Positions 28,476-63,437 of a DNA stretch of 64,000 bases are shown here, one piece after another. Below the pieces are notes generated by a model. That model was not told where the DNA came from, ran no database searches, and worked only from the letters and a program-made list of their open reading frames with translations. Each line of letters begins with the position of its first letter. The stretch's first letter is position 1. The DNA lies in NCBI RefSeq assembly GCF_031769215.1, contig NW_026782185.1, positions 62,001 through 126,000 of the forward strand, in the 5' to 3' direction. Source of the DNA: Ylistrum balloti (lineage: Eukaryota). Both the position numbers and the translations under genes were made by a program.

Positions 28476-29379
28476 GAAACTGATCTGCATGGTTAACAAA
28501 TACGTTAAATATCAAATAAGCTTAAGAGATGAATTATATTGAATAATAAAATGTGTTAGAGGCTGAATATAAATGATATAATGTATCTTTTGTTCACAGG
28601 CTGAAATATTTGTAATGTAATAGCATTTTTTTCCCATCGTTTATTTAATTTGTGCATAAAAAAAAATCGTTATTTTTAGGGAAGTCAGTAATTGTTGTAT
28701 GGTTCAATATTGTACAAGAGACACACACTATGTAATGTGATAGCACCATTTCATACTTTAGATCGAATTAGATGTAAACAGCTGTTTCATCTTTCTACGA
28801 CTCGTCCATACGGCCATAGATTCGGAAGAAACTTAAAAAAAAACTTTAAAATTTCATATGCGATATTTAGATACTCGTTACCGTCATCATAAGTGCTTTG
28901 GACCCTCAAAAACAAATCAAAATTGGGGATTAAGAATTTTATTTTAATGCCAAATAATGTATTTAACCCAGTTTACATGACGATAGTTGCATATGTGCAA
29001 ATGTTTTGCTTGTATGCGCATACATGTATACAGATAAATTTGCAACTAATCCGGCTAGATGCAACGCATATTTTCACATGTGAAAAAAGATTTGGGAGTA
29101 AAAATGTGTGCAGATTTCGTCATATGAAGTGGCTAGCAAATTTGAATAACTGTGTATTTGTGTCAAGATTGATTTAGATAACAAACATTACAAACAACAC
29201 CAAAGTACGCGGAAGGGATGTAACTCTGCAATACACAAACAGAAATATTATCTGACAGGTAAAGCAGAATTTTCATCACTGAACCAAGAAACAATGAATT
29301 GGGCATATATCTGTTTACTTTAGATATATCTCTGAAACCTGGTGACATAGGGGTTTACGAATATACAATGTCGCCATGA

Positions 29380-30614: not shown

Positions 30615-33600
30615 ATGGCGGATGTTTCCCAACAACAAACAATACCGCATGGTTTCACCGGAGCAGCATACCCGGATGTGTTCAATCTAAATGCAATGCC
30701 AACTCAGTCAAATGAACTTAAGCCCGGTCAGCTTTCAGAAAGCAAGATACGACAGTTCTTTGAAGACGTAAGAGAATATAGATATATTCAATGATACCGA
30801 TAAAGCGTGATATTACAAAGGTAATTAGGGTAGCCGACATATCTACAGGATTGCTGGCAAATCACAAAGGATTCTTCGCAAGTCATTGTTATTATCCTGT
30901 CAAAGCTTTATCAATGATGATATTTTTCTATATTTAGGACTTTCATTGTTAAACTATCAAAATGTATTGATCATGAATGTATGGAATCGGCATATAACGC
31001 CAGAAAATATTTATTCAACTCAAACTCTCCTACTAGAACTATCTTTTTATTATAGGGATACCTAATAGTGGACAACTTTTTCACACGTGAAGAATTGGAC
31101 ACGTGCAGAAACGCCGTCAATGAACAAGTGGAACACTTAGCACAGAAACTCTATAGGGCAGGCAAAATTAAGAGTAAGATTTCTCGTGGTTAAATTATCA
31201 ACCATTCTATAGATATCTGATTTCAATCAAACGTGTGTTCTTCTCATTAATATGGTCCTCGATATTGACTCAGACGAGATATCATATGAAGGACTTCAGT
31301 TTTCGTCTTTTTTTTTCACAGGTTTGTATACCGAGTTTGGATTCTTTGACCGATTGAGTAAATTAGAAGAGGAATTCCCCGGGGCCAATATTATCCTTCA
31401 CAAAGGCGATGGTTTACCAGAGGTTTGTTGATATATAAAATCTTCTCGATTTTCTAATTTTAGGATCTGAAGGCTACGAAACCAATCAAATCCAAATAAA
31501 AACCGATGAAATGAGGTCAAAATATGAAAATGGCGCATCGGGGATGAATTACTGATGATATAAAAAGTATCGAAGGATTGATCATATATAATAATCCCAT
31601 TTCTGCGATGTTGCCGCTTTATATTTAAAATCAAGCAAAACCAGATAATTGGCAAATGCTCAAAGTTATTTTTTAGTGAAACTTGAAATTGAAGTTCCAA
31701 ATTTTGCACATGTTTGCATGGACGTTGCTTGCTATTTCGTTCTATGAAAAACGACAAAAATCTCAATTTCGATATCGTCATAATAAATCTTTTCCTGTTT
31801 AAGGCATTTAGAAATTTGTGGACAAATGTACGCTTACTGAATGTAGTAGAACAGCTAATTGGTCCAGACATAGCCGGACATCCGGTCTGGAACTTGCGCA
31901 CGAAAACACCTCAGAACGAGGCTACCACCGTGCCCTGGCATCAAGGTACACAATGGATATGTTTTGTCTGATATCGTTGGCCACCAACGTCTTGCTATTG
32001 GCAGATGGTCCGTATGATGCATAAATCCCTGATTCTCTGTGGGTTTAGATATCCTTCTTTAAGTTTTGAAGTTGAGTTCATAGATTTTCTCTGATACCTT
32101 CCTTGTGTTTTACCAATGTTATTATCAACATTATAAACATTGATTTTAAACCTTTAGACTCTGCCTACCTTGACAATGATTCCTACCAAGTGCTTCAACC
32201 TACGGCTTGGATCCCCCTTGTGGATGCTAATGAACAAAATGGATGTATGCAGGTAGACTTGAATGAACAATACTTTATGGTTTCCTTAAAATGTCGGCTT
32301 TGTATGATGTATTTTTAAATTTATTCTTTATTTTCCAAAAAATATAATCGAAAACGAAAATTTTAAAAAAATCTCGAAATAACAACATTTTTTTATCGAG
32401 AAACAAGTTTTTTTTTAAAATAATAGAAAACAAACAAGTTTTACAAAATAAATAGAAAATAGAAGATGCCCTTCACTATTGAAAAATCCGTTTGAGTTTC
32501 GGTTGATGGAGGTTTACTCGAAAAGAATCTTAACGTTAACTTTGCATGTTTTCAAGGTTATTCATAGAGGCCACAAAACGGGAATTGTGGGTAACCATCA
32601 ATGTTGCTATGGTGGCACTTGGTATGTCATGCTCGAAGAAAAAGAAATGCTGAAAACTTTGGGTAAACTATAAATTGTATATTCATACTCGATATTGACA
32701 ATTAACGAGTGCAGTTTAACCAATCATTTGGGCTCTACTGCATCTAATTCTGAATTTGTAATCAATAGTTACATACATTTGCGTTTATTTTGTGTAGTTA
32801 TTGAAGCACGTATTTGGAGCTCTCGACTTTTCTTTTGATACATATCTATTAATTATCTTAATAACATAAGTGTTTCATAATGATTTTGCTGCCAGCTTCG
32901 ACTCAATATTGAACTATTTAAGGCATTCTGCTTTATACATGTAATTTGTATCAGATTTACGGTGGTTTAGTGGTTAAGGCGCCTCAACGTCTTTATCACT
33001 GGCCCTCCACCTTTGGGTGGTGAGTTCGAGGGATACATTGGACAATCGCCAGGAACTGGCCGCAAGCTTTCCTCTACCACCCAAACTTAGTATGTTCTGA
33101 GCTGACCCTGGTTGTTGTTAGACGTAAAGGGAAAATTATAGTTGAATTTAAACACCGCATTTAACATTCTATATCTTTCCGTGATTACAATAAGGTAGAT
33201 TTTTCGTGGAATATACAGGTGCAGAGATTCCAGACGACATACGGACATGTCCTGTTCTATATGGCGGCATGCTGCTTCTGAACAATGTAACCCCACATCG
33301 AAGGTACAACATGCCTTTTACTATATTATGATGACTAACTTGCCCTTAAATGACCTATCTTAAGTGATTGGTTCCTGTTCATGATCTTTATTGGAGTAAA
33401 TCCTTAATTATATCAAAGATCTCGGTTTAGGAAATCTACCAAGGATCTCGGTAATGTTAATCCTCAGTTATATGTCAATTATATGGCAACATTTATGTTT
33501 TAGTTTACCAAACATGACACAGGAAATTCGTTGGAGTTTGGATCTTCGTTTCCAAAACCCAAATCTCCCTTTTGGATTTTATGGAATGAAGAAAGGAGTG

Positions 33601-37583: not shown

Positions 37584-40189
37584 GTAAGTAAGAGGTGTTA
37601 TTGAGTCTTGACCATTTACTACATGCTCGGTATACAAACTACGCACAACGGTCGCTTGAAATTCGTGTGGATGGATGTTATTGAGATAGACAGTGAAAGT
37701 GTTGTTTATACATGTAATGCATAACACCTCCAATCTGTATACCACTTTACATCTTTGTCCATATGTCTATTTCATGTAAATACACGTATGCAAATTTGAT
37801 ACGTACACTCAAACTATTTTCTATGGAGCGTCATAGTTGTCATATATGTTGTATAGCATACGATATGAAATGATATTTTCATTATATCTATATCATTGGG
37901 ATAGGATTCAGTTTTATTATATGATCCTATTTTATCGTTTTACTTCTTTAATTTTATAAAAATAGTTTATTTCATCAGTATTTACATGACGTCACTAATA
38001 TATGATTTGGTTTTACGAATTTATCATTTGGTTGATCGTGATATGATTCGATATTTTTTTTATTAATGTTTAAATCTTGCCGTTATTTGCTGTAACTTTA
38101 GTATGTGCTTTTTCCATCGCATGGTATGGATATGACGTGAAATTCTGCTTTTAAAAGGAAAATGTGCTCTAACCGGAACCGGAAATCTGACTGATTTTTT
38201 TTAATGATAACTTACCTACAAAGATTAGCATTACCTTTAGTTATTCTAATACTGTAACGGCAACAACATATAATATAATAGCGAAGCCGAATGAAAAAAC
38301 CAAGATAACATCAAAGCATGCAATAATGAAATAAAATGATATAACAATGAAAGTTATCAATAGAACAGTAGAAACAAATACCATGTGAACATAGTATGAT
38401 GATATACATTAATATATATTTGATATCAAATTATATTTTGATGTATTTAGATTAAATAATGGCAACATCAAAATCAAATAATGTAATGACAAGATTTATA
38501 AATATACGAAAAAATCAAAAGTTATTGATGAAATCATATTTTGAAATTATCAATTTATACATATTTCTAGCATAAAATGCTTAATGCACATACATATATA
38601 TCACGTATTTATCTTGGAACAAGCAAGTCAATGATAAGAATGTTCTTTTAAACATGAAGTAATACAGTTAACACACGACTATTCATTGAAAAAGCAATGG
38701 ATACCAATATTTCTATTATTTTTGTGAGAATATCTTCATACTGATATTCAGTAGGGACGATATCTTACTTATAAATTATATTTTGTCAGATAGTGGTGCA
38801 AATGCATGGATTTAAGAAGTGACCATTAAATAATAATTTAAATCTATGTCATGAACTGTATATGGAAATTTTTATTATTCTTTTTTAGCCTTAATCTCAA
38901 CTGAAGAATCTGTAATGTTTTGATTTCAGTTTGCAAATATTGAGACCTTGCTACAATATTCTTTTTACATTACATTTTGATTACACTTATTTTAAAAAAT
39001 CAAATTTGCATGCAGAAAATCCACCGAAAATCATACTGGCGTAGACAAAAACTAGTATTCGTAAATTGATTATTATTATAATTACAAGCTAACCGGTAAT
39101 AGCTTAGTTTCACTTGCATCTATGGCATCTATTATTTGTTAAACGGATTTTATGTCCGTTACTATTGCTTCTCGACCTGTCAGCGAAGAGAAGAGAGGAA
39201 ATAGTTTGAATCGACGAGAGTGGGATAAAGAGCTGATGTAGAGTTGAGTAGTCTATACTACATGTCCTTAATTATAATCGTGAAAACGGCCCCCTTGGCC
39301 TAATTATAACTCTAATCTTAACCTTGATTAGGCACGAAGCAGCAAAAAGCCGATGTAGGACATAGAAGATAAAGATAATCCCTCACTGTATTGATTTTGA
39401 TATGTTTATAATATTTTGGAGGGCCGTCAAAATTTCTTGATAATTAGTTACTATAACTAATCTAATCCTAACCTCTGGCCGGCGTTACAACGCCTGCTTT
39501 TTTCGAGAAAAAAAAAACAAAACTAACTAAACACAGATGGATCTTATTGTGCGAGTTGGGACCGCCACTTTAAGTCCCATCCAACGGATAGTGTTGAAAA
39601 TGGTTTTAACTATGGTATTATGTAGAAGCTTATTTTAGAGCAGATGATACTAGTACATTTGCATACTTACACCACTTATTTTAATCAATACATAGAGATA
39701 ATATCAATATCAATCTGAAGGGAATAATAGTATATTCTGGAAATATCTCGACACACTCACACGCATTATCAGTAATTTGATTATATTCGGTATTGAAAAA
39801 CGGTTACTTTCGTTTTGTTAAAGGGAGATAACTTGAAAACGACTGGATATGGAATTTAAATAGCGTATAGTCTGCTCATATAATTCAGTCGAAATGTTCT
39901 CTTGTCAGTTGTTGTTTAGTCGCCACTGTCTTAAATATGCATTCAAATATCATTACTATTAATGATTTTCCAGCTTCGGTCTCACCTTATTGACTAATTT
40001 GCTTCATAATCTGAACATGAATATTGTATGATTTTCACACCTTCTATCTATTTTCCCAGACCACATCTTTATAAAACTTTGAGCTCGAAATACGATTTTA
40101 GATACACATAACGATTACAAAGTGTATAATATGAATTAAAAAAGGTTCAATAAAGGTTCAATAAAAATTGTCAAACCAAACTTACAGGT

Positions 40190-40235
40190 GGCAACATTGA
40201 AAAATCCGAAAGGGACGAAACAGCTGCATGATGCC
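40190..40235 (+). ncRNA. Decayed minimal hammerhead-ribozyme copy
   Basis: GGCAACA-TTGAAAA-ATCC GAAA GGGAC-GAAA-CAGCTGCA-TGATGCC: stems I and II are recognisable, but the core (CTGANGA) and cleavage triplet are mutated. Confidence 0.5.
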
Positions 40236-40397
40236 GTTTCAATTATTGTTGTGCTTTACTGTATCTAGTTTTTAAAGGTGCTATTCACTATTGGCTTTTG
40301 TGTTATCATCGTACAATTGGCCGGAGATAATGTCATGCCTACGTGACAAATGACATGTTATCTTCTATTTTCTCGCATTGGCTTTAAACAACATAAA

Positions 40398-48815: not shown

Positions 48816-49025
48816 GGTCGGGTGGCGAAGTGGTAACGCACTCACCTTTCACCTAGCCGACCGGGGTTCGGTAAAGGGTCACCTGCCCGACTACGTGGGT
48901 TTTCCCCGGGTACTCCGGTTTCCTCCCACAATAAGACCCCTCGCACGCTTACATCCGGGCCAACAAGAGTGATTAGTATAAGTTGACATAACTTGTTTCC
49001 CAATTGTTGTAAAATAAATAAAGTT
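48816..49025 (+). mobile_element. tRNA-derived V-domain SINE
   Basis: Head GGTCGGGTGGCGAAGTGGTAACGC...GGGGTTCG, core GGGTTTTCCCCGGGTACTCCGGTTTCCTCCCACA and A-rich tail. Possible 11-bp TSD TTATCTCTTAT at 48799-48809 and 49030-49040. Confidence 0.8.
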
Positions 49026-52300: not shown

Positions 52301-54404
52301 ATGGTGGATGAGGAGGAAATGGAGAAAAGTCTTGGTAAAATTTTGTTTGTCTTTAAGAAGTGTGGGGGTCTTAAAAACTTATTAAAGGTTTTCATAGTGT
52401 TATTCCTCTTATACAAATCAATATGTCGCCAATAGGACAAGTATATCAGAATAAGGATTTGTAAAAGGTGTTTTTCATATCACAAAACAACCCCCATCGC
52501 CAGCGTTGCAGCATTGCGTACATTAATGGTGTTGTGACATTATGTTCGATAGCACTTTGCGAAAACTTTATGATACCATGACGTCATATGCATTCTGACT
52601 CTTCGCAAGTGTCAAACGTATCTGATGAACAGAATCGGACATTCGTTTCCATTCCATATGTCATTAATGAAACATAAGTGTTGTTTTTGTTTTATAGGTA
52701 TGAACCCAGCAACCGATATTGTCACGTGTGAAATACCATATGGTGGAATGTTACTGTTGAACAACATGATACCACACAGAAGGTAAATGTACAAATGCTT
52801 TTGTTTTTACAAAAATACATATCTAGTTAGATACCGTAAAGCTAATCACTGAATAATATTGCATCATACAGCTGTTTTCGAAAGAAATAGAAATGTCAGA
52901 TACTAGATAGGGAGGTGCGCTCAGCCTACTATTCGATAGTTTTCGTAATTTTCATACATATCTGATTATTTCAGGGGGCGTCAAGTACATGTGTATTTTC
53001 TGAATCGTGTCATTTTTCAAATAAATTTAAATTTGACCGATACCCCTTAAGATTTTAACCATTGTAGACATTGATGGTGGTACATATTGATATAAACACT
53101 TACTAAATCTGTTGAGAGATTCATGATATATCCTGTCAGATTTTTCATTTCAAAGGTGGTTTAGTGTCAACCTTAAGCAGTTAATCTAGACTGACTACCA
53201 CCGAAATCTAATGAGGTGTATAATCTGATGATGTGATATCATTGAATGTATAATTCTCTTGAAAGGTTAATGAAATATTACGTACACACTTTCGTTTTAT
53301 TTTAAAAAGTGACAAGTTGGGCATTTGACCCTTTTATCTTGATCGATGACAACACAAAAGCTAATCTTGATTGTATGATATCATGGTGTCATATGGTACA
53401 CAAGATAGGTATAACGGTCGCTCAGACGAGCAAAGCGATTCCAATGTGCCACACTGTATTAAACGGAAATTTGCATGCTAGTTCCTATCTCTGTTGAAAA
53501 GTCAACATTTAGCATCATGTAAGAAACCACCCTTACTAATTCTTCACATTTGCTTACTTCATGAAGCCTACCAAATGTTTCCGGGGATATACGTTGGAGC
53601 CTTGACCTACGCTGGCAGAAACCTGACCTACCTTTTGGCTTTTATGATTTGAAACAAGGCGTTCTCATGAGGACTGCTAAAGATCCTAATTTCAAAATGT
53701 CGTGGGATGTCTTTGATAGTACCGTTCGACATTCGCTTTTGAGGGAGGCGACTGTCGAGGTTAGTAAATAAGACCAGCAATCTGGTCTCAGATGCCATTC
53801 GGATTTCATGTCGTTTAACCTTACTCATGATTATAATCAGTTCATGTTTTACAGTGACAATATTCAATCGTCCATAACTATAGAAAAATTGATCACTAAC
53901 ATTGATTAGTGTATAGATATTTAAGATAGTTGCAACTCGCACTTTGGCTGGAATAAGGAGTGTGATGCGTTTACTTTGAATGTTTGTTCGTTTCAAATAT
54001 ATTGTTTGGTTATATTTTGTTTGAAATGTAAATTATTTGATTTATGTTTAAAGTTATTTTCGTAAATGTGATATTTCTGTATTGCGTTGCTCTACATTGC
54101 AAAACCTCGTTACTGAAATCTTATTGTTTAAGAAAATGGAACGAAAGCAGGGTCAATATCCAAATACAGCTGCTCGTTGTCTGTGATATGACAAAAAAGA
54201 AACAAAAACAAAACAAAGTATAATTTTTTTACCGGATTTTGATCTCTTTCACATGATTTTGTAACTTTTCCTTTTTGTTAGAATACAAATGAGGACGAAT
54301 TCGACACGACTATTCAGGGACCATGGATGAAAAAATGGGAAATTGTGCATGTGAACCGACATGTTGAAAGCTACAGAGAGGATCGCGTTGCAGACAAGTC
54401 CTAA
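49347..54404 (+). CDS. PhyH-family Fe(II)/2OG dioxygenase, paralogue C, 9 exons, 372 aa
   Basis: Exons 49347-49502, 49824-49941, 50442-50542, 50937-51078, 51864-51958, 52229-52334, 52698-52782, 53567-53759 and 54282-54404. In frame; HQD, PHRS and RWSLDLR intact. Confidence 0.94.
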
Positions 54405-55788: not shown

Positions 55789-58700
55789 ATGGCGAATGTG
55801 TTCATCGAGCCTGTCCTTGCGGGGTACACCGGAGAGGAACATGCTGAGGTCTTTGACCTACGAGCAATTCCAAAACCTACAAAAGAACGGAGAGTGGGGC
55901 AACTATCGGAGGACGAAGTGCGGAGGTTCTTTCTAGAGGTGAATACGCTCATTTTGAGTTTCATTTAGTGATTTGTCTTATATATCTTGACTACATCCAA
56001 ATTGATATTGTGTGTGACCGTAATAACAACACTCATCGCTGATTTACGTCAAATCCAAAATATACCATTGTTTGAAATATTCATTGTAAACGGAAAAATG
56101 TCGTCTCATCACAAGAAGGGAGAAAAACAAAAAAAATAAGCTTATTTTTGATATTATAGATGCAGATGGGTGTAGACTAATGTTTACACCTAGTACACTT
56201 ATACCTCACAAGATAAAGACTAGGTTTACACGATGTTTATACTACTGGTAAACTATTTACACAGTAGACCTGGCACAGGTGATGGAGCTATCTCCCCAAA
56301 AAAAGTAATGGACAATAATTTTTACCTGTGTAATATTTAAAGTTCTTACCTGTATAGTATCCTACTGTTATGTCAATGACCTCGTTTTTATTCTTATGTA
56401 ATTTTTGTACAGTATGTGCACACTAGGAGTTGATTAACAATGTTTTACTGATTAGTTATTTGCTCTTTGGTTTGGTAAAGAAGACCAGGTGGTAATTTTT
56501 ACATGTATTTACCTGCATTGTAGTTATTACTATTAATATGAGCTGGTAAAAACAGGACTCCATTTAGGGTTTTGCTGCAAGAAATTGTGGGGGGGGGGAA
56601 GAAGGGGGACGCAAGCAACCGCTGACGCAGGATCCTCCAACGAAATGAAGCATTTGCTGTTAATATTTGAACGTTGAATTACGAGGAGAGAGTGTGAGGA
56701 ATGTGAAAAAGCAAATGATTAATATTAATCTCAAAATATATCTGTTAAACAAATAATCTAACATTCCAAAATAAGCCTGTTTTGCCATCATAAATATTAA
56801 CGACAGTGGACAGTATGTTACATAGACTTTTATTTTTTAAGTCGTATCTTATATAATTAATTGTGATATTTTTATTTTGTCAGTAAAAGGACTTTCATGA
56901 TCATGAATAACATTTTTTAAATTTAAAACATTTACCTTTTATTGTGATTAATATACATCTTTTAATATTTACTGAATACGTTTAATTATATTGTACCAAA
57001 CAGGTAGTATTGTAATATAAGGAATCTCTAGAACCATACAGGTAAAAACCAAACGTTGCCTTGACTTTTTACCTGTGTCTACTCCTAGTTTACATGTAAT
57101 CTGTTTCTTGTAAACTAGAAGTCTTTTTATCGTGCATAACCAATGAAGTAGGGTGTAAAGAGTAGTCTATGTATATCATATTCAATACATGATTCAATCA
57201 ATATTTGTTAATATTTCAAACATCCCCCCTCCCCCTTTCGGTACAGAAATACGTTTGCTAGCTAAATAGGATGTAAGAATACGTTAAATATCAATATAAG
57301 TCAACTTTAATGTAAACCATATTTTGAACAGGGATATGTACTTGTGAAGGATGTCTTCCGAAAAGAAACATTGGAAACCTGCAAAACGGCTATAAATGAA
57401 ATGGTTGATGAACTGGCTCAAAAATTATACAAGGCAGGCAAAATTACAGGTAACGCTACCTTAATGTTTGCCCCTTTCATTCTTTATGTTTTCTATCTCT
57501 CAATTCTAATTTCTGTCAACCGATATTTTAATGATAACGTGCAGAGCGTTTGGGATTTAAGATTTCCATCATGCGTTTGTTCAGTAACAAAATTGTCAGT
57601 TGTGTAATAAGTGCGGAACAACTTTTTCAAATTTATTTTGATTTGAATTTCTTCACTTATGTGTCTTTTGTACAAGCAGATGGTAGACATTGCTTGTGGA
57701 CTTCATGTCCACGAGGATTGTCGTACCATGCATGTTTTAATTCATTCAAATAGTGGCATGGTTCAGAATATACACATATATTTGAAGCTGTTCAAAAATT
57801 TCTAATATATGAAAGTTACGAAATGTATTTTATACTAGGGCTGCTTCACCTCCCCGTCTGGAATTTGACTGTTCATTCGATCACTTTGGATTTCCTTCAG
57901 TCGTCTCCTTGGCTTAGCGTCACTGACGAGTCCTAGAAGGACGAAACAGCCGTATGATGTAGTTTAATTTATTGTTTGGCTCTACATTATTGCATGTCTC
58001 TTGTATAATCTTCTGTAATTGTCCTACGATTACCCATTCAGATCACATTGAAATAAAGTAACTTTTTCATTAACAGATCTATGCACGAACTTTGGATTCT
58101 CCGATAGATTGATCCGTCTGGAAAAGCAGTTTCCGGGAGCAAATGTTCTCTTTATAAAACAAGCGCGATTAACTCAAGTTAGTATGCGTCTTAACATTAT
58201 TTAAGACATGTCGTCAGAGCGGAAAGCAAGAGCAACGAAAAACAAGAAACAAAACAATAAAAATTAATAATAATGATATTAATCGAAAGAAAAGTATGAT
58301 TATTCACGATTACCTAGTATGACTTGAACATTATTAAAAAATATAATAATTTTTTTTCCATTATGCAGATGATTATGAACTGTTTGGATTTTGTGGTCCT
58401 TTCTTGGCACGTCTATACAATTTCTAAAAAGACAAAGCACATCAATATTTTGTCTCAATATATAAATGATTTTGTACATTTTATATCAAACAAACTTCCT
58501 TCTTCCTATTCACATATTTCACAAGGCTTTTAAGGACCTCTGGACAGATGAAGCCTTATTGAACATTATTGAACAGTTGATAGGACCAGATATAGCCGGA
58601 CATCCAGTTTGGAACCTGCGTGCAAAAATACCACGTGATGAGGCTACAACAGTGCCTTGGCATCAAGGTATCGATAGAAAATATTCAAACTATTCCTCCC

Positions 58701-61700
58701 TGATCCAAACTAATCGTTAAAAATATCTGATGTTTTCACTTACTCAGACAAAAAAATAACATAAGATTCATCTTAAATTATAATCGAATATTGTAAGGAT
58801 TTTACGGTCAATTATATCTTTGTAAGCTACATAATTTCATTTAATCCATTTTTGTCTGTTTCTAAAAAGATCTTCAAGTTTATCATTCATAAACAATTCA
58901 CGATCTGCTAGATATACAACATAAAAATATAGCTCAATATCAGATTGCCTGTCTCTATAGTAAACATAGTATGTATGCATCAATTCATCTCCCCGTTTGA
59001 TGTTTCATAAGATCCATATAAGTGATAAAGGTCAGCAAGCACATCAAGAAAATACCAACATGACAACATAATCATAATCCAAACTCAAATTCCATAGAAT
59101 TAGGGCAGAATAGGAACAAAAGTACAAGAAGAATAAGACCAAGTGTTCCGAAAGCGTAAGCGTCTCCTGTTTCACCTACGACACCTGCCATGTAAAACAA
59201 TGGGCATTGGAACTGCATTCCTCATGCTAGACGTTGATAACTATTATATGCAACAATATATATATAACAAGCATTCATTATCTATTTTACTATATTTTCT
59301 ATGAGAAGTTTTTTTATCATACAATCAAACACCTTTACAGTTAAGTTGAATGCCATCCAATAGTGGTTCCTTTTTTAATGTATCTATATTTTCAAAACTC
59401 TAAATTAAAATGATAAAAATCAGTATGATAAAAAATGAGATAAATGTATTGTGTGAAGCAAATGTACATTCTAACAATTATAATTTAAAAAGTGAATATC
59501 CAAGCGACTCTCCTACTTAACCATATCATAATTTACACGAGAACATCATACAGTATAACAATATATAAAGACTTATTTTATATATGCATTTAGTTTCATA
59601 CACAGTAGGGCTATATTGCCATTTTCAAGTCAATATTACGGGCGTGCATTAATATCCGAATGAGTAAACTGATTTTGTTTTATCATATTATTTTATGATA
59701 TAGACAATATTGTTTCTGATCTAAGGGGATTGGTAAGTATGAAGGAGACCATGACATATCATTGCATAACTTTAAGATTAGTAATTAATGTTAATAAAAT
59801 ATTCGATTGAGTTTTATGTCAATTGACCACATCCAACCACCATAGGTGCAAACTCTTAGTATTGACAACAGTGAAAGATTTACTATAACTCTGTTTTTTC
59901 TTGTCTTCATACGTTAAGACAAATTGGTGTACAGCAATGTCGACAAGACATCAATTTCTAAGTATTTTATACATCTATGAATGTTATTTACTAATAATGT
60001 CATCTGTCCTTATAATGCTTTTTCATCCTCGATACTCCAGGGGTTACAATCATTTGCGCCATCTCTGCGCCACTGGAACATTTAATGGCATAATTGAAGG
60101 TTTCTTGTGCGACACCTTATGAACAAGACAAAAAGATTTTTTTTGATCCTTTGATGTACATCAAATGAATCTAGAGGTCGCAAAACAGTGTATTGTGATG
60201 GCTTTGAAGTTGATTGTCGCTCCTTTGTAGTCTTCAAAAGGAATGCATCAGCCTGTAATTGGTCAGTTTGTTATTTCCTGGAACCAATCAGACTACTTTG
60301 CTTGTGCCTTCAATTTTGCCATGACATGTTCCAGGGATGCAAAGAGCCAAAGTGATCATCCTAACTCCTGGAGTATCGAGAGTAAAGTTTTATCGGCAAT
60401 ATTATAAAATTATCATTTTCAAAATCGGCTATATTGATCGACTGAAATTCACCAAGTTGCAATTTTCATTGTAGCTTTGAACACGTGTATTAGAGATGAT
60501 ACGCGCATTTGGACAGCATTATGCATGTAGCCATATAATTTATTTCAAGCATGTTCATGTAAACATAAGTTACTTAACTTAATGTAATATATTTTAACGA
60601 TAATTTGTAGTAACATCCACTCTAGATAGCTGTAAAATGCGTTATATTTAACTTTTCAAAATAAATGTAATGGTTTCAGATAGTGGATACCTAGACACAA
60701 ATAGTTATCGTGTGTTACAACCAACGGCGTGGATTCCGTTTGTGGACGCTACCGAAACTAACGGCTGTTTACAGGTGCGTATATCTACATTCTAAATGGT
60801 CGAAGAAACCGATGGTTGTCATACAGCAACATCTTTAAAAGTAATAATTTCTTTCATATTTCATTACATTTTGTGAAAATTGTTTTTATGTCATCCATAA
60901 AAAAATAGCTTAATATCAAACAGTCTAGTGTTCATATGGTGAGAAATAAATCACATGTTTGTCGTTCAATATTTAGAAAGAAACAGAAAACAGTAGCTTT
61001 ACAGCATGAACTTCTGCTAACTTTGTTGTGAGAAAAGCCAAATAGCATGTACAGGTAGTAATACAAAATGAAGCTTCATGATGTTTAAAGATCTCTCGAC
61101 TCTGATGAAATCATATTGTGACAGAGAAAATGACAAAAAAGTTATAGAAAGAAACAGGACACGAGATTCAAAGTCTCACGGCTCAGAATATACACATGTA
61201 CTTGACATTGTCCGAAAATTATTGGGTATTTGAAAACATGCTATAAATGTGTTCGTCATTTGTACAATTAAGGAGAAATTACTTGTCTCTGTAATTGATA
61301 GATTATGCAAGGCGGTCACAAATCAGGAAAAGTTGCTACTCATCAGTGTTGTCATGGTGGCACGTGGTACGTCATGTTAGAAGAAGACGAGATGGAGAAA
61401 ACACTAGGTAACACAATCCTTTAATAAATACTTGAATTGGTTTGAAATATTTCTTATTCTTTACACAGAAATTGTTTCCTTTTGTCTTTAACGAGGTGTT
61501 TCATGTTAACAAGTCAAATGTTATCATAGCCTTCATCAGACACGGACATATGTCTTTAGAATTGTGACAGGATATTACACGACAATTAAAACTGTTTGAA
61601 TATTTATATATTTGTGATGATCATTGCAGAAGAATTTGTTTTGATACATAAAGGGACATTTTGATGTGTTTAGGTATCAATGTAAAGACAGACATCAGGA

Positions 61701-63437
61701 CGTGCCCAGTTCCGTTAGGGAGTATTATTCTATTCAACAATTTAATTCCTCATAGAAGGTATGTACATGTACGTCACTAAATACATATTCAGTACCTGCT
61801 TGTTTCATTTTGCGTAACATTCTTCGTTTGTAATTATCTTTACAATCGGTAGACGAAAATATTAATTAACATTGTAAGCCTACATTAAATTGCTTAATTT
61901 GAATGGTGCAGTGTTCAGAACTCAATTTATACCTATGTACTTTACGTTCATCTGACATCACCCAACACTGAAACGTATTGAATTACAGGTCAGCTTCACC
62001 TACTCAACGTTAAATCCGGTCAATTTAATTTGCCTTATTTGCCTCCTATGTTTTGGTTCTTAAATTTCCTATCATCATTGACGTATCCTACAAGGACGAA
62101 ACAGCTGTACTGTATCGTATTATAATCATAAATTTGTATTGAACATTGTTATTCATTTGGGTGTCGTTTGTACATTGTTTTGTATATCAATTTGCTGAAG
62201 CATTTTAGGCAAGACCAACTTACTTTGAAATATTTTTTATAGCAAAGTTCGCCCAAGAAATAGTTAACAAATATCAAAGACGGTTGAATTTAATACAAAA
62301 TGTAATGGTAAGGAACGAAATCAGTTTCTTTGCACTGCAAAGATGTCAAAGTCATGTATTTTTCACATTCCCGCAGCTTCCTTTTGCAAACTAAAATTAT
62401 ATAAACAGAGTGTCATAAAATTTGAAGTAAAAAACACTAAACGGATTAAAACAATGTAAGGGAGATAACTTTGAACCGCTCATGTTGTCAAAATTACACT
62501 AAAGTAAAAAAGCATAATTCATTGATTATTTATGTCCCTCTTACGATCTTTCAATTGAAATCCTTATTATTGAGAAGCTAAAAAAGCATAAATATTTGTT
62601 TATATTTTTGTTGTGACAATATCAATGATTCTATATTTTCATTTTGTTCCTAGTGTCCCCAGACGGCTCTTCTCATGTTGAAATGGTATCCAGTTAATTC
62701 TCTTGTTTATTGTGATATTTCTTTTCATTCTATTCCTAATCAAGTTTGAATAACGTATCAGACCATGTCCGGTGGAGTGTTGACCTGCGCTGGCAGAATC
62801 CGGGTTACCCTTATGGGTATTATGACCTCAAAGAAGGGGTCATATTTCGGACAAAGGACAACCCTAACCCCGTGGTGGATTGGGACACGTTTGAAGGGGT
62901 TGATCGGTTCCAGATCAGTGCTGACGCTGTTAAAGAAAAAACGCAGGTGAATATGATTGCTTCTGAAAAAAGAATATTTTGACGGTAAACGAAATAATTT
63001 TTGCTAACGGTAGGTAGTATTTTCACAGTAAATGAAGTTAGATATATTAAGCAGGTAAAGTTGTTTTCCTTTCAATATAATTCACTGAAACAACATCCAC
63101 TGAACAATGTTCATCGGAATACATTTTCGGATTTCGATCGAATTTACCACAGCATGATACATTCTCTGTGCTTCCTTTAGTCTAAAAAACCTATAGGAAC
63201 TTCCATTATTCCGTTTTTTAAAAACTTCATCAGAAAATATTTTCATTGCTGTTTGATAAAATTTATGTTCTTGCTATAAACTGAACCATAGATATTTATA
63301 GATATTGTTTATGTTCGCAGGATGAAGAGGCAGTTGAATTTGATACCTCTATTCAAGGACCTTGGATGAAGAAATGGGAAATCGTCCATATCAATCAGCA
63401 TGTGCTTAAAATGCAGAGTGAAGAAAAATCATCTTAA
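55789..63437 (+). CDS. PhyH-family Fe(II)/2OG dioxygenase, paralogue D, 9 exons, 371 aa (most divergent)
   Basis: Exons 55789-55938 (in-frame ATG also at 55783), 57332-57449, 58077-58177, 58526-58667, 60680-60774, 61302-61407, 61674-61758, 62745-62946 and 63321-63437. HQD, PHRS and RWSVDLR intact. Confidence 0.93.
57917..57960 (+). ncRNA. Minimal type I hammerhead ribozyme with intact catalytic core, in intron 2 of paralogue D (sense)
   Basis: Stem I GCGTCA(57917-22)/TGATGT(57955-60); core CTGACGA (57923-29); stem II GTCCT-AGA-AGGAC (57930-42); GAAA (57943-46); minimal stem III AC-AGCC-GT; GUA cleavage triplet (57952-54). Confidence 0.8.
60028..60380. mobile_element. MITE with ~55-bp imperfect terminal inverted repeats, intron 4 of paralogue D
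   Basis: CTCGATACTCCAGGGGTTA...CACTGGAACA on the left is the inverse of TGTTCCAGGG...TAACTCCTGGAGTATCGAG on the right. Confidence 0.65.
62071..62115 (+). ncRNA. Decayed minimal hammerhead-ribozyme copy, intron 7 of paralogue D
   Basis: CATCA-TTGACGT-ATCCT ACA AGGAC-GAAA-CAGCTGTA: stem II, GAAA, palindromic ACAGCTGT and GUA are kept; core positions and stem I are mutated. Confidence 0.55.

What the first reader, a model, noticed from the sequence alone, without database searches (positions are those of the whole stretch)
57917..57960. Intact minimal hammerhead ribozyme on the sense strand of a dioxygenase intron
GCGTCA CTGACGA GTCCT-AGA-AGGAC GAAA C AGCC GTA^TGATGT has every conserved hammerhead core nucleotide (CUGANGA, GAAA, GUH), a perfect 5-bp stem II and a 6-bp stem I (two G-U pairs). 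Stem III is only 2 bp. This is the minimal type I form known from Penelope-like elements and metazoan retrozymes, which cleave as dimers. It lies in intron 2 of paralogue D in the transcribed orientation, so self-cleavage at 57954/57955 could cut the pre-mRNA co-transcriptionally, affect splicing or release a small RNA. The stem III palindrome is imperfect here (ACAGCCGT vs ACAGCTGT in the 62-kb copy), so activity is not assured.
Basis: partly seen in the sequence, partly recalled or inferred. Interest (0 to 1): 0.8.

Follow-up and report, generated by a model that had tools for sequence, protein, structure and literature searches.

The report
Hammerhead ribozyme relic of an intronic retroelement
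The hammerhead ribozyme motif is real, but it is one slightly damaged copy among more than 3,400 such motifs carried by a short mobile repeat (a retrozyme, probably moved by Penelope-like elements) that landed in this intron, so it is ordinary for this genome.

Summary
Window 57917-57960 (+) has every conserved type I hammerhead core base, a 6-bp helix I with two G-U pairs, a 5-bp helix II and a 2-bp helix III. Rfam RF00163 scores it 27.3 bits, below the 34-bit cut-off (E 0.018 for the window).

It is not a lone ribozyme. It sits in a roughly 368-nt copy (about 57645-58012) of a dispersed non-coding repeat with a unit of about 395 nt. That repeat has a fixed 3' end, variable 5' ends and partial-tandem structure.

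- The genome (648 Mb; other agents of this scan call it a scallop, which I did not check) holds 3,484 exact matches to the family's ribozyme pattern, against 0 for the reversed control.
- The window copy differs from the family consensus by 15% and has two internal deletions.
- 8 of 29 sister copies also keep an intact core, and four other relics in the window are broken.
- A T-to-C change breaks the 8-nt helix III palindrome. The consensus folds as a double hammerhead at its energy minimum; this copy does not (+7.6 kcal/mol).

The intron and sense-strand placement is confirmed; the host gene being a dioxygenase is not. This scan had already noted related hammerhead repeats on other pieces of this genome.

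Verdict: a known kind of element, most likely a neutral passenger with weak or no cleavage. Low interest.

The parts
57917..57960 (+). Type I hammerhead ribozyme motif. Helix I is 57917-57922 / 57955-57960 (6 bp, 2 G-U). Core CUGACGA is 57923-57929. Helix II is 57930-57942. GAA is 57943-57945. Helix III plus loop ACAGCCGU is 57946-57953. A17 is 57954. The predicted cut lies after 57954.
   Evidence: RF00163, 27.3 bits, full-length alignment; helix pair counts
57645..58012 (+). One copy (about 1.05 units) of a roughly 395-nt non-coding hammerhead-bearing repeat (retrozyme-like, non-autonomous). GC is 37.5%. The 5' limit is good to about +/-10 nt. The 3' end lies at the family's fixed end ...AATCTT.
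   Evidence: 40 genomic copies were scored (29 fetched and aligned), at 73-79% identity; unit period is 392-397 nt in L038 and L054
57651..57674 (+). A piece of the tail of a preceding unit, joined to the head of the unit with an 11-nt deletion at the junction. This is the partial-tandem signature.
   Evidence: alignment A2 with the tandem junctions of L038, L050 and L054
57961..58012 (+). 3' tail of the unit downstream of the ribozyme. It carries an internal deletion of about 35 nt relative to sister copies.
57450..58525 (+). Host intron (1,076 nt, GT...AG) of paralogue D, between exon ~57332-57449 and exon 58526-58667.
   Evidence: exon order shared by four paralogues; splice sites
62020..62181 (+). 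Older related relic in a later intron of the same gene. Its ribozyme at 62070-62109 has a dead core (UUGACGU) and a mismatched helix I, but an intact ACAGCUGU palindrome.
52813..53037 (-). Family relic with a destroyed ribozyme, antisense within paralogue C.
40177..40320 (+). Family relic with a destroyed ribozyme core, just upstream of the first mapped exon of paralogue B.
28706..28806 (-). Family relic with a destroyed ribozyme core.

Best explanation
The motif is the ribozyme of a retrozyme-type element: a short, non-coding, non-autonomous retroelement. Its unit of about 395 nt carries one canonical metazoan type I hammerhead followed by a tail of about 85 nt.

In the element's own life cycle (inferred from published work on such elements), multimeric transcripts are cut by hammerheads that pair through their palindromic helix III as double hammerheads. 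The monomers can then be circularised by a host RNA ligase. New copies are made by the reverse transcriptase of Penelope-like elements. This leaves a fixed 3' end, variable 5' ends and partial tandems.

One such copy inserted, in sense orientation, into an intron of paralogue D and has since decayed. It shows 15% substitutions, two deletions, two wobble changes in helix I and one change that breaks the helix III palindrome. Its core survives by chance.

As a lone copy with a 2-bp helix III and no good dimer partner, it most likely cleaves the pre-mRNA weakly or not at all. It is probably a neutral passenger of the intron.
For: Shown here:
- Full-length match to RF00163.
- The own-genome DNA search gave 3,400 first-look candidates. 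All 40 scored were 73-79% identical over window 57700-57985.
- The 29 fetched copies show a sharp common 3' end at ...AATCTT with differing 5' starts, several of which run into the tail and ribozyme of a preceding unit.
- 3,484 exact matches to the family's ribozyme pattern, against 0 for the reversed control.
- RF00163 finds 27 hits above the cut-off among only 73 scored candidates.
- Window copy against the majority of 29 copies: 15.2% divergence outside the ribozyme and 3/44 inside. The difference is not significant.
- 8 of 29 sister copies keep an intact core. Four other relics in the window are broken.
- The consensus pair has the double hammerhead as its minimum-energy dimer (-33.3 kcal/mol). 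For the window copy that fold lies 7.6 kcal/mol above its best dimer and above two free monomers. With a consensus partner it lies 2.9 kcal/mol above.
- The monomer's minimum-energy fold pairs core bases CUG with CAG. The active fold is 4.9 kcal/mol higher.
- Penelope-like elements exist in this genome: 72 GIY-YIG matches. Several lineages carry a minimal hammerhead about 800 nt downstream on the same strand.

From the literature:
- Mussel retrozymes have 350-390 bp units and about 5,000 hammerheads (PMC7229834).
- A short palindromic helix III means the ribozyme acts as a dimer, and single minimal motifs are inactive in vitro (PMC4209133).
- Penelope-like elements form partial tandems and start reverse transcription at an internal site (PMC11167929).
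- About 43% of Xenopus retrozyme copies lie in introns (bioRxiv 10.64898/2026.07.22.740005).
Against: - No autonomous partner sharing this family's ribozyme or tail was identified. One case (L084, tail 85 nt, 82-85% identity, about 730 nt downstream of a GIY-YIG domain on the same strand) is a single locus and may be a chance neighbour.
- Full tandem multimers of the 395-nt unit were not seen, only partial tandems and 45-nt ribozyme arrays.
- The ribozyme is less diverged than its flanks. The trend is in the direction expected for selection, though not significant.
- Energy models ignore tertiary contacts. A cloned mussel retrozyme repeat did self-cleave during transcription in vitro at about 0.1 per min (PMC7229834), so some cleavage cannot be excluded.
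- No convincing target-site duplication.
Confidence: 0.85

Rival explanations
1. The intronic copy is an active, exapted ribozyme. It cuts the pre-mRNA of paralogue D as it is transcribed and so tunes the gene's expression or splicing, or releases a small RNA. This would resemble the conserved intronic hammerheads of amniotes.
For: The core is intact, the motif is on the sense strand, and H17 is A, a cleavable base. The ribozyme is less diverged than its flanks, 6.8% against 15.2%. Both helix I changes keep pairing as G-U wobbles.
Against: - The divergence difference is not significant, P 0.08-0.17.
- 28% of random sister copies are equally intact.
- The score is below the Rfam cut-off.
- The palindrome is broken, and the active monomer and dimer folds are disfavoured.
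- The copy is absent from the homologous introns of paralogues A-C.
- No comparative or RNA data are available.
Confidence: 0.06
2. The copy is cut in trans. Abundant RNAs of the same repeat family would pair with it through helix III and helix I, forming a mixed double hammerhead. The family RNA would supply the catalytic strand and the intron copy the substrate strand.
For: By inspection, a consensus 5' strand GCAUCA pairs with the window's UGAUGU in 6 bp (one G-U), and helix III pairs 7 of 8. The mixed double hammerhead (-26.8 kcal/mol) is 1.4 kcal/mol better than the two free monomers (-25.4). Thousands of source loci exist. Mussel retrozyme RNAs reach high levels (PMC7229834).
Against: The mixed double hammerhead lies 2.9 kcal/mol above the best mixed dimer, which buries the core. 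Expression of the family in this animal is unknown. No case of such trans cleavage of host transcripts is known to me. This is inference only.
Confidence: 0.04
3. The motif is a chance match with no ribozyme ancestry.
For: The score is below the Rfam gathering threshold and E is only 0.018 for the window.
Against: The motif and 330 nt around it are homologous to thousands of copies whose consensus is a perfect hammerhead.
Confidence: 0.01

Closest known systems
Metazoan non-LTR retrozymes (Cervera and de la Pena 2020, PMC7229834), especially the 350-390 bp repeats of the mussel Mytilus galloprovincialis with about 5,000 type I hammerheads
   Same: Both have a type I hammerhead with a 6-bp helix I, a 4-5 bp helix II and a 2-bp helix III capped by a 4-nt palindromic loop. 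Both are non-coding units of a few hundred nt (about 395 nt here) with low GC (37.5%) and thousands of copies, in a bivalve-type genome. The unit RNA is strongly structured (z = -4.0).
   Different: Here I saw only solo and partial-tandem copies of the unit, plus 45-nt arrays of the ribozyme alone. I did not see long arrays of whole units. Circular RNAs were not tested. The window copy is a decayed solo insertion.
Minimal hammerheads in the pseudo-LTRs of Penelope-like elements (Cervera and de la Pena 2014, PMC4209133)
   Same: Both have a palindromic helix III that implies action as a dimer. Both show partial-tandem copies with a defined 3' end. Such elements are present in this genome with their own minimal hammerheads.
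   Different: The Penelope-like copies seen here have 6-nt palindromes (ACAUGU, ACCGGU, ACUAGU), other helix II sequences and a 5-bp helix I. The window's family has an 8-nt palindrome and no reverse transcriptase gene. No partner element was tied to it.
Newt satellite 2 and Schistosoma Sm-alpha hammerheads, the double-hammerhead model (Forster et al. 1988, as cited in PMC4209133)
   Same: The architecture and core-plus-helix II sequence (CUGAnGAGUCC...GGACGAAAC) are nearly the same. The consensus is predicted to fold as a double hammerhead.
   Different: It occurs in a different animal group and a different repeat unit. The window copy has lost the perfect palindrome.
[quoted passage not shown]
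   Same: Both are type I hammerheads on the sense strand of an intron of a protein-coding gene.
   Different: The amniote motifs are single-copy, stable as monomers and conserved across species. This one is a repeat copy with no sign of conservation and a weak helix III.

Membership tests
Hammerhead ribozyme, type I (Rfam RF00163) | Conserved core: C3 U4 G5 A6 N7 G8 A9, G12 A13 A14, the A15.1-U16.1 pair, and H17 not G | tested here: met
   All positions are present at 57923-57929, 57943-57946 and 57953-57954.
Hammerhead ribozyme, type I (Rfam RF00163) | Three helices around the core, with helix I open (type I topology) | tested here: met
   Helix I has 6 bp (2 G-U), helix II has 5 bp, and helix III has 2 bp plus a 4-nt loop.
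Hammerhead ribozyme, type I (Rfam RF00163) | Score at or above Rfam's gathering threshold of 34 bits | tested here: not met
   The score is 27.3 bits and there is no hit at the gathering threshold. Sister copies in the genome reach 34-41.6 bits.
Hammerhead ribozyme, type I (Rfam RF00163) | Site-specific self-cleavage that leaves 2',3'-cyclic phosphate and 5'-OH ends | not testable with these tools
   Energy models only. The active monomer fold is 4.9 kcal/mol above the minimum-energy fold, and the double hammerhead is 7.6 kcal/mol above the best homodimer.
Metazoan non-LTR retrozyme | Type I hammerhead inside a non-coding repeat unit of about 150-450 nt with low GC | tested here: met
   The unit period is 392-397 nt. 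GC is 37.5%. No ORF lies in the copy other than a chance 67-codon frame.
Metazoan non-LTR retrozyme | Head-to-tail tandem arrangement of units (dimers to multimers) | tested here: inconclusive
   Partial tandems of 1.05-1.5 units were seen in the window copy and in L038, L042, L050, L054 and L058. No complete multimers were found among the 29 loci examined.
Metazoan non-LTR retrozyme | [quoted passage not shown] | not testable with these tools
   No RNA data are available.
Penelope-like element (autonomous) or its pseudo-LTR | Adjacent ORF with a reverse transcriptase domain and a GIY-YIG endonuclease domain | tested here: not met
   The copy fills 368 nt of a 1,076-nt intron, and the only neighbouring ORFs are the host exons. 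The 30 GIY-YIG loci examined carry other hammerhead variants.
Penelope-like element (autonomous) or its pseudo-LTR | Insertion signature: fixed 3' end, variable 5' end, partial tandem | tested here: met
   The expectation comes from PMC11167929.

The most novel reading that the evidence does not exclude
Sense-oriented intronic copies such as this one may still be cut in vivo, either alone or after pairing with abundant RNAs of the same repeat family. If so, a retrozyme family would act as a dispersed trans-acting and cis-acting brake on host genes that carry its relics, here on one of four tandem paralogues.
Probability: 0.05. Interest if true: 0.55.

Novelty: new member of a known kind. Interest (0 to 1): 0.15.

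Why it matters
On its own it matters little. It is one more fossil of a well-described class of ribozyme-bearing mobile repeats, and earlier notes of this scan had already flagged related families on other pieces of this genome.

It is useful as a caution: an 'intact' hammerhead in an intron of this animal is the expected by-product of thousands of insertions, not a sign of regulation.

The family as a whole may be worth a specialist's look. It includes a roughly 395-nt unit, more than 3,400 perfect ribozymes, ribozyme-only 45-nt arrays, and several Penelope-like lineages with their own minimal hammerheads in one genome. That makes it a possible system for testing how retrozymes depend on Penelope-like elements.

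Tried and rejected
1. The Rfam scan at gathering threshold gave nothing. The motif appears only in the permissive scan.
2. A second, upstream ribozyme relic at about 57569-57612 was suggested by eye from alignment A2. Local alignments of 57450-57660 against ten family copies scored no better than shuffles (z from -1.7 to 1.6), so I rejected it.
3. A mixed dimer with the 62-kb relic on the same pre-mRNA is rejected by inspection. In a double hammerhead the catalytic strand for the 57954 site would come from the relic, whose core is dead (C3 and A9 changed). The reciprocal helix I pairs poorly.
4. A link to the Penelope-like lineage of L064 and L080-L087 is rejected. The family-like pieces in L081 and L085 lie beyond the point where those copies stop being alike (about 200-270 nt after the GIY-YIG match). 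They are therefore separate insertions.
5. Rfam does not see the minimal hammerheads of the Penelope-like loci at E up to 0.1. They were found by pattern and read by eye.
6. Host gene identity: single exons gave no Pfam family at or near its cut-off (two chance-level matches, E 0.05 and 0.1, on one exon) and no meaningful PDB match. Pfam PhyH finds no match on this contig. Exons were searched one by one by reference. The joined (spliced) protein was not built or searched.
7. Target-site duplication: only a 6-nt TGTAAT at 57603 and 58014, which is not convincing.
9. A literature search for retrozymes in scallops returned only papers on hammerhead sharks.
10. The species was not verified. 'Scallop' comes from other agents' notes.

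Full report
**Observation.**
- Helix I is GCGUCA / UGAUGU, 6 bp with two G-U pairs.
- The core is CUGACGA.
- Helix II is GUCCU-AGA-AGGAC.
- Then come GAA, helix III with its loop (ACAGCCGU, only A-U and C-G paired), and A17.

The predicted cut lies between 57954 and 57955. Rfam's type I hammerhead model RF00163 aligns it over all 45 model positions at 27.3 bits. E is 1.4e-4 for 501 nt and 0.018 for the whole window, both strands. That is below the curated 34 bits, so the default scan is blank. The pattern CUGANGA-N(8-30)-GAAAC occurs three times in the window against 0.55 expected. Only this occurrence has the helices.

**What it sits in.** A DNA search of the window's own genome (G000, 648.5 Mb, 1,372 contigs) with 57700-58100 gave 3,400 first-look candidates. 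All 40 that were scored matched at 73-79% identity, and nearly all ended at window 57985.

I re-aligned 29 fetched copies.
- The family runs from about 57645 to 58012 in the window.
- Copies share a fixed 3' end (...ACAAUCUU), about 85 nt downstream of the ribozyme.
- They have differing 5' starts.
- In L038, L042, L050, L054, L058 and L059 the head of the unit is preceded by the tail, and in L038 and L050 also by the ribozyme, of another unit. These are therefore partial tandems.
- The period is 392-397 nt in L038 and L054.

The window copy has the same build. Bases 57651-57674 are the end of a preceding unit's tail, joined to the head with an 11-nt deletion. Its own tail lacks about 35 nt. 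Similarity further upstream is not better than chance. The copy has no ORF of note, 37.5% GC and a compact predicted fold (z = -4.0).

**The family's ribozyme.** The majority sequence is GCAUCA CUGACGA GUCC-UAGA-AGGAC GAAAC AGCUGU A UGAUGC. It has a perfect 6-bp helix I and an 8-nt palindrome, ACAGCUGU.
- An exact pattern holding the core, helix II, a 5-nt loop, the palindrome and GUA occurs 3,484 times in the genome (1,822 + 1,662). The reversed control occurs 0 times.
- RF00163 gives 86 matches, 27 above the cut-off, among only 73 scored of about 100,000 rough candidates.
- Many are head-to-tail arrays with a 45-nt period, each unit a whole ribozyme.
- In L049, L058 and L059 such an array replaces the single ribozyme of the family unit.

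**State of the window copy.** Against the majority of its 29 relatives it differs at 15.2% of positions outside the ribozyme and at 3 of 44 inside it. The three changes are A to G and C to U in helix I, both leaving wobbles, and U to C in the palindrome.
- The difference in divergence is not significant (Fisher P 0.17, binomial P 0.08).
- At 15% divergence, 13 core positions stay untouched with probability about 0.12.
- In fact 8 of 29 relatives keep the core and spacing, about six of them with both helices.
- The window holds other relics of the same or related families at 28.7, 32.7, 40.2, 52.8, 61.2 and 62.1 kb. The four that still have a ribozyme region (28.7, 40.2, 52.8, 62.1 kb) all have broken cores.

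An intact motif is therefore what one expects now and then from this repeat.

**Predicted folding.** Alone, both the window RNA and the consensus prefer a fold in which core bases CUG pair with CAG. The active fold is 4.9 kcal/mol higher in each. This fits the published view that a 1-2 bp helix III hinders efficient self-cleavage as a monomer (PMC4209133).
- Two consensus molecules have the domain-swapped double hammerhead as their minimum-energy dimer: -33.3 kcal/mol against -27.2 for two monomers.
- Two window molecules do not. The double hammerhead is -20.3, which is 7.6 above their best dimer and above two free monomers (-23.6). The cause is two A-C mismatches in helix III.
- With a consensus partner it is 2.9 above the best dimer.
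- These models ignore tertiary contacts.

The 62-kb relic cannot help. Its core is dead and the swapped helix I pairs poorly (inspection).

**Gene context.** tblastn of four ORF pieces of the last gene against the window finds the same pieces, in the same order and on the + strand, in three further places (about 30.6-33.7, 40.4-44.9 and 49.4-53.8 kb). There are therefore four tandem paralogues.
- The ribozyme lies between the exon ending at 57449 (CAG|GUAACG) and the exon starting at 58526 (...CACAAG|GCU). This is a 1,076-nt intron, and the motif is on the sense strand.
- Of the homologous introns in the other paralogues, A's is 632 nt, B's about 1,440 and C's about 990. None of them carries the copy.
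- I could not confirm that the genes encode dioxygenases.
- I searched exons singly and left out the joined protein. The window's 163 N were left untouched.

**Link to Penelope-like elements.** The genome has 72 GIY-YIG matches, many within long open frames.
- In three lineages a minimal hammerhead sits about 800 nt downstream on the same strand. It has a 5-bp helix I, a long helix II and a 6-nt palindrome (ACAUGU, ACCGGU or ACUAGU). Copies stay alike for a further 100-200 nt. This is the same ribozyme-then-tail-then-end layout as in the window's family.
- None of the 30 loci examined carries the family's own ribozyme as part of the element.
- L084 has the family's tail about 730 nt downstream of a GIY-YIG domain, but this is a single case.
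- More loci could not be fetched.

**Comparison with the literature.**
- The family matches metazoan non-LTR retrozymes in ribozyme architecture, unit size, GC content and copy number. The nearest published case is the mussel, with 350-390 bp units and about 5,000 ribozymes (PMC7229834).
- The partial tandems and fixed 3' end fit mobilisation by Penelope-like elements (PMC11167929; bioRxiv 10.64898/2026.07.22.740005).
- In Xenopus about 43% of retrozyme copies lie in introns (same preprint), so an intronic solo copy is not unusual.
- Earlier notes of this scan on other pieces of the same genome describe related hammerhead repeats and a Penelope-like fragment. They also name the animal a scallop, which I did not test.

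**Verdict.** The functional reading is unsupported. This is a known kind of element, most likely a neutral, weakened relic.

Noticed in passing
L049:1732-2798 (G000:C16:299451-300387); also C874:485752-486065, C348:515503-516041, C18:513530-513966: There are head-to-tail arrays with a 45-nt period in which every unit is a complete hammerhead ribozyme. In L049, L058 and L059 such an array (up to about 23 units) replaces the single ribozyme of the 395-nt family unit. Neighbouring units could pair as double hammerheads in cis. I did not find this layout described in the papers I read.
   Followed up: partly
L068, L070 (ACAUGU); L071, L076, L077, L088 (ACCGGU); L069, L079, L083 (ACUAGU): Three lineages of Penelope-like elements carry minimal hammerheads with 6-nt palindromic helix III about 800 nt downstream of the GIY-YIG domain on the same strand. 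Rfam RF00163 misses all of them at E up to 0.1.
   Followed up: partly
G000:C422:240415-261997 (L072-L075, L089) and C129:50248 / 67535 (L066, L067): Near-identical copies (95-99.9% identity) of a GIY-YIG-bearing element have open frames of 425-755 codons. On C422 five copies are spaced about 5.3 kb apart in tandem. This is observation only.
   Followed up: no
G000:C19:1174834-1175945: The same ribozyme (loop UUGAA) recurs seven times at an exact 180-nt period. This looks like a separate tandem family with a short unit.
   Followed up: no
window 28706-28806 (-), 32710-32796 (+), 40177-40320 (+), 52813-53037 (-), 61166-61236 (+), 62020-62181 (+): Six further fragments of the same or related repeat families lie in and around the four paralogues. 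All that still have a ribozyme region have broken cores. Four are in sense and two in antisense relative to the genes.
   Followed up: partly
window 48816-48893 (+): There is a weak tRNA-like match (RF00005, 22.9 bits, below the cut-off of 29). It may be a SINE head or a chance hit.
   Followed up: no
window 59042-59206: Another dispersed repeat, unrelated to the hammerhead family, matches L033, L035, L040 and L052 at 70-87% identity.
   Followed up: no
window 30651-62979 (+): Four tandem paralogues share exon order, but no exon matched Pfam PhyH or any solved structure.
   Followed up: partly
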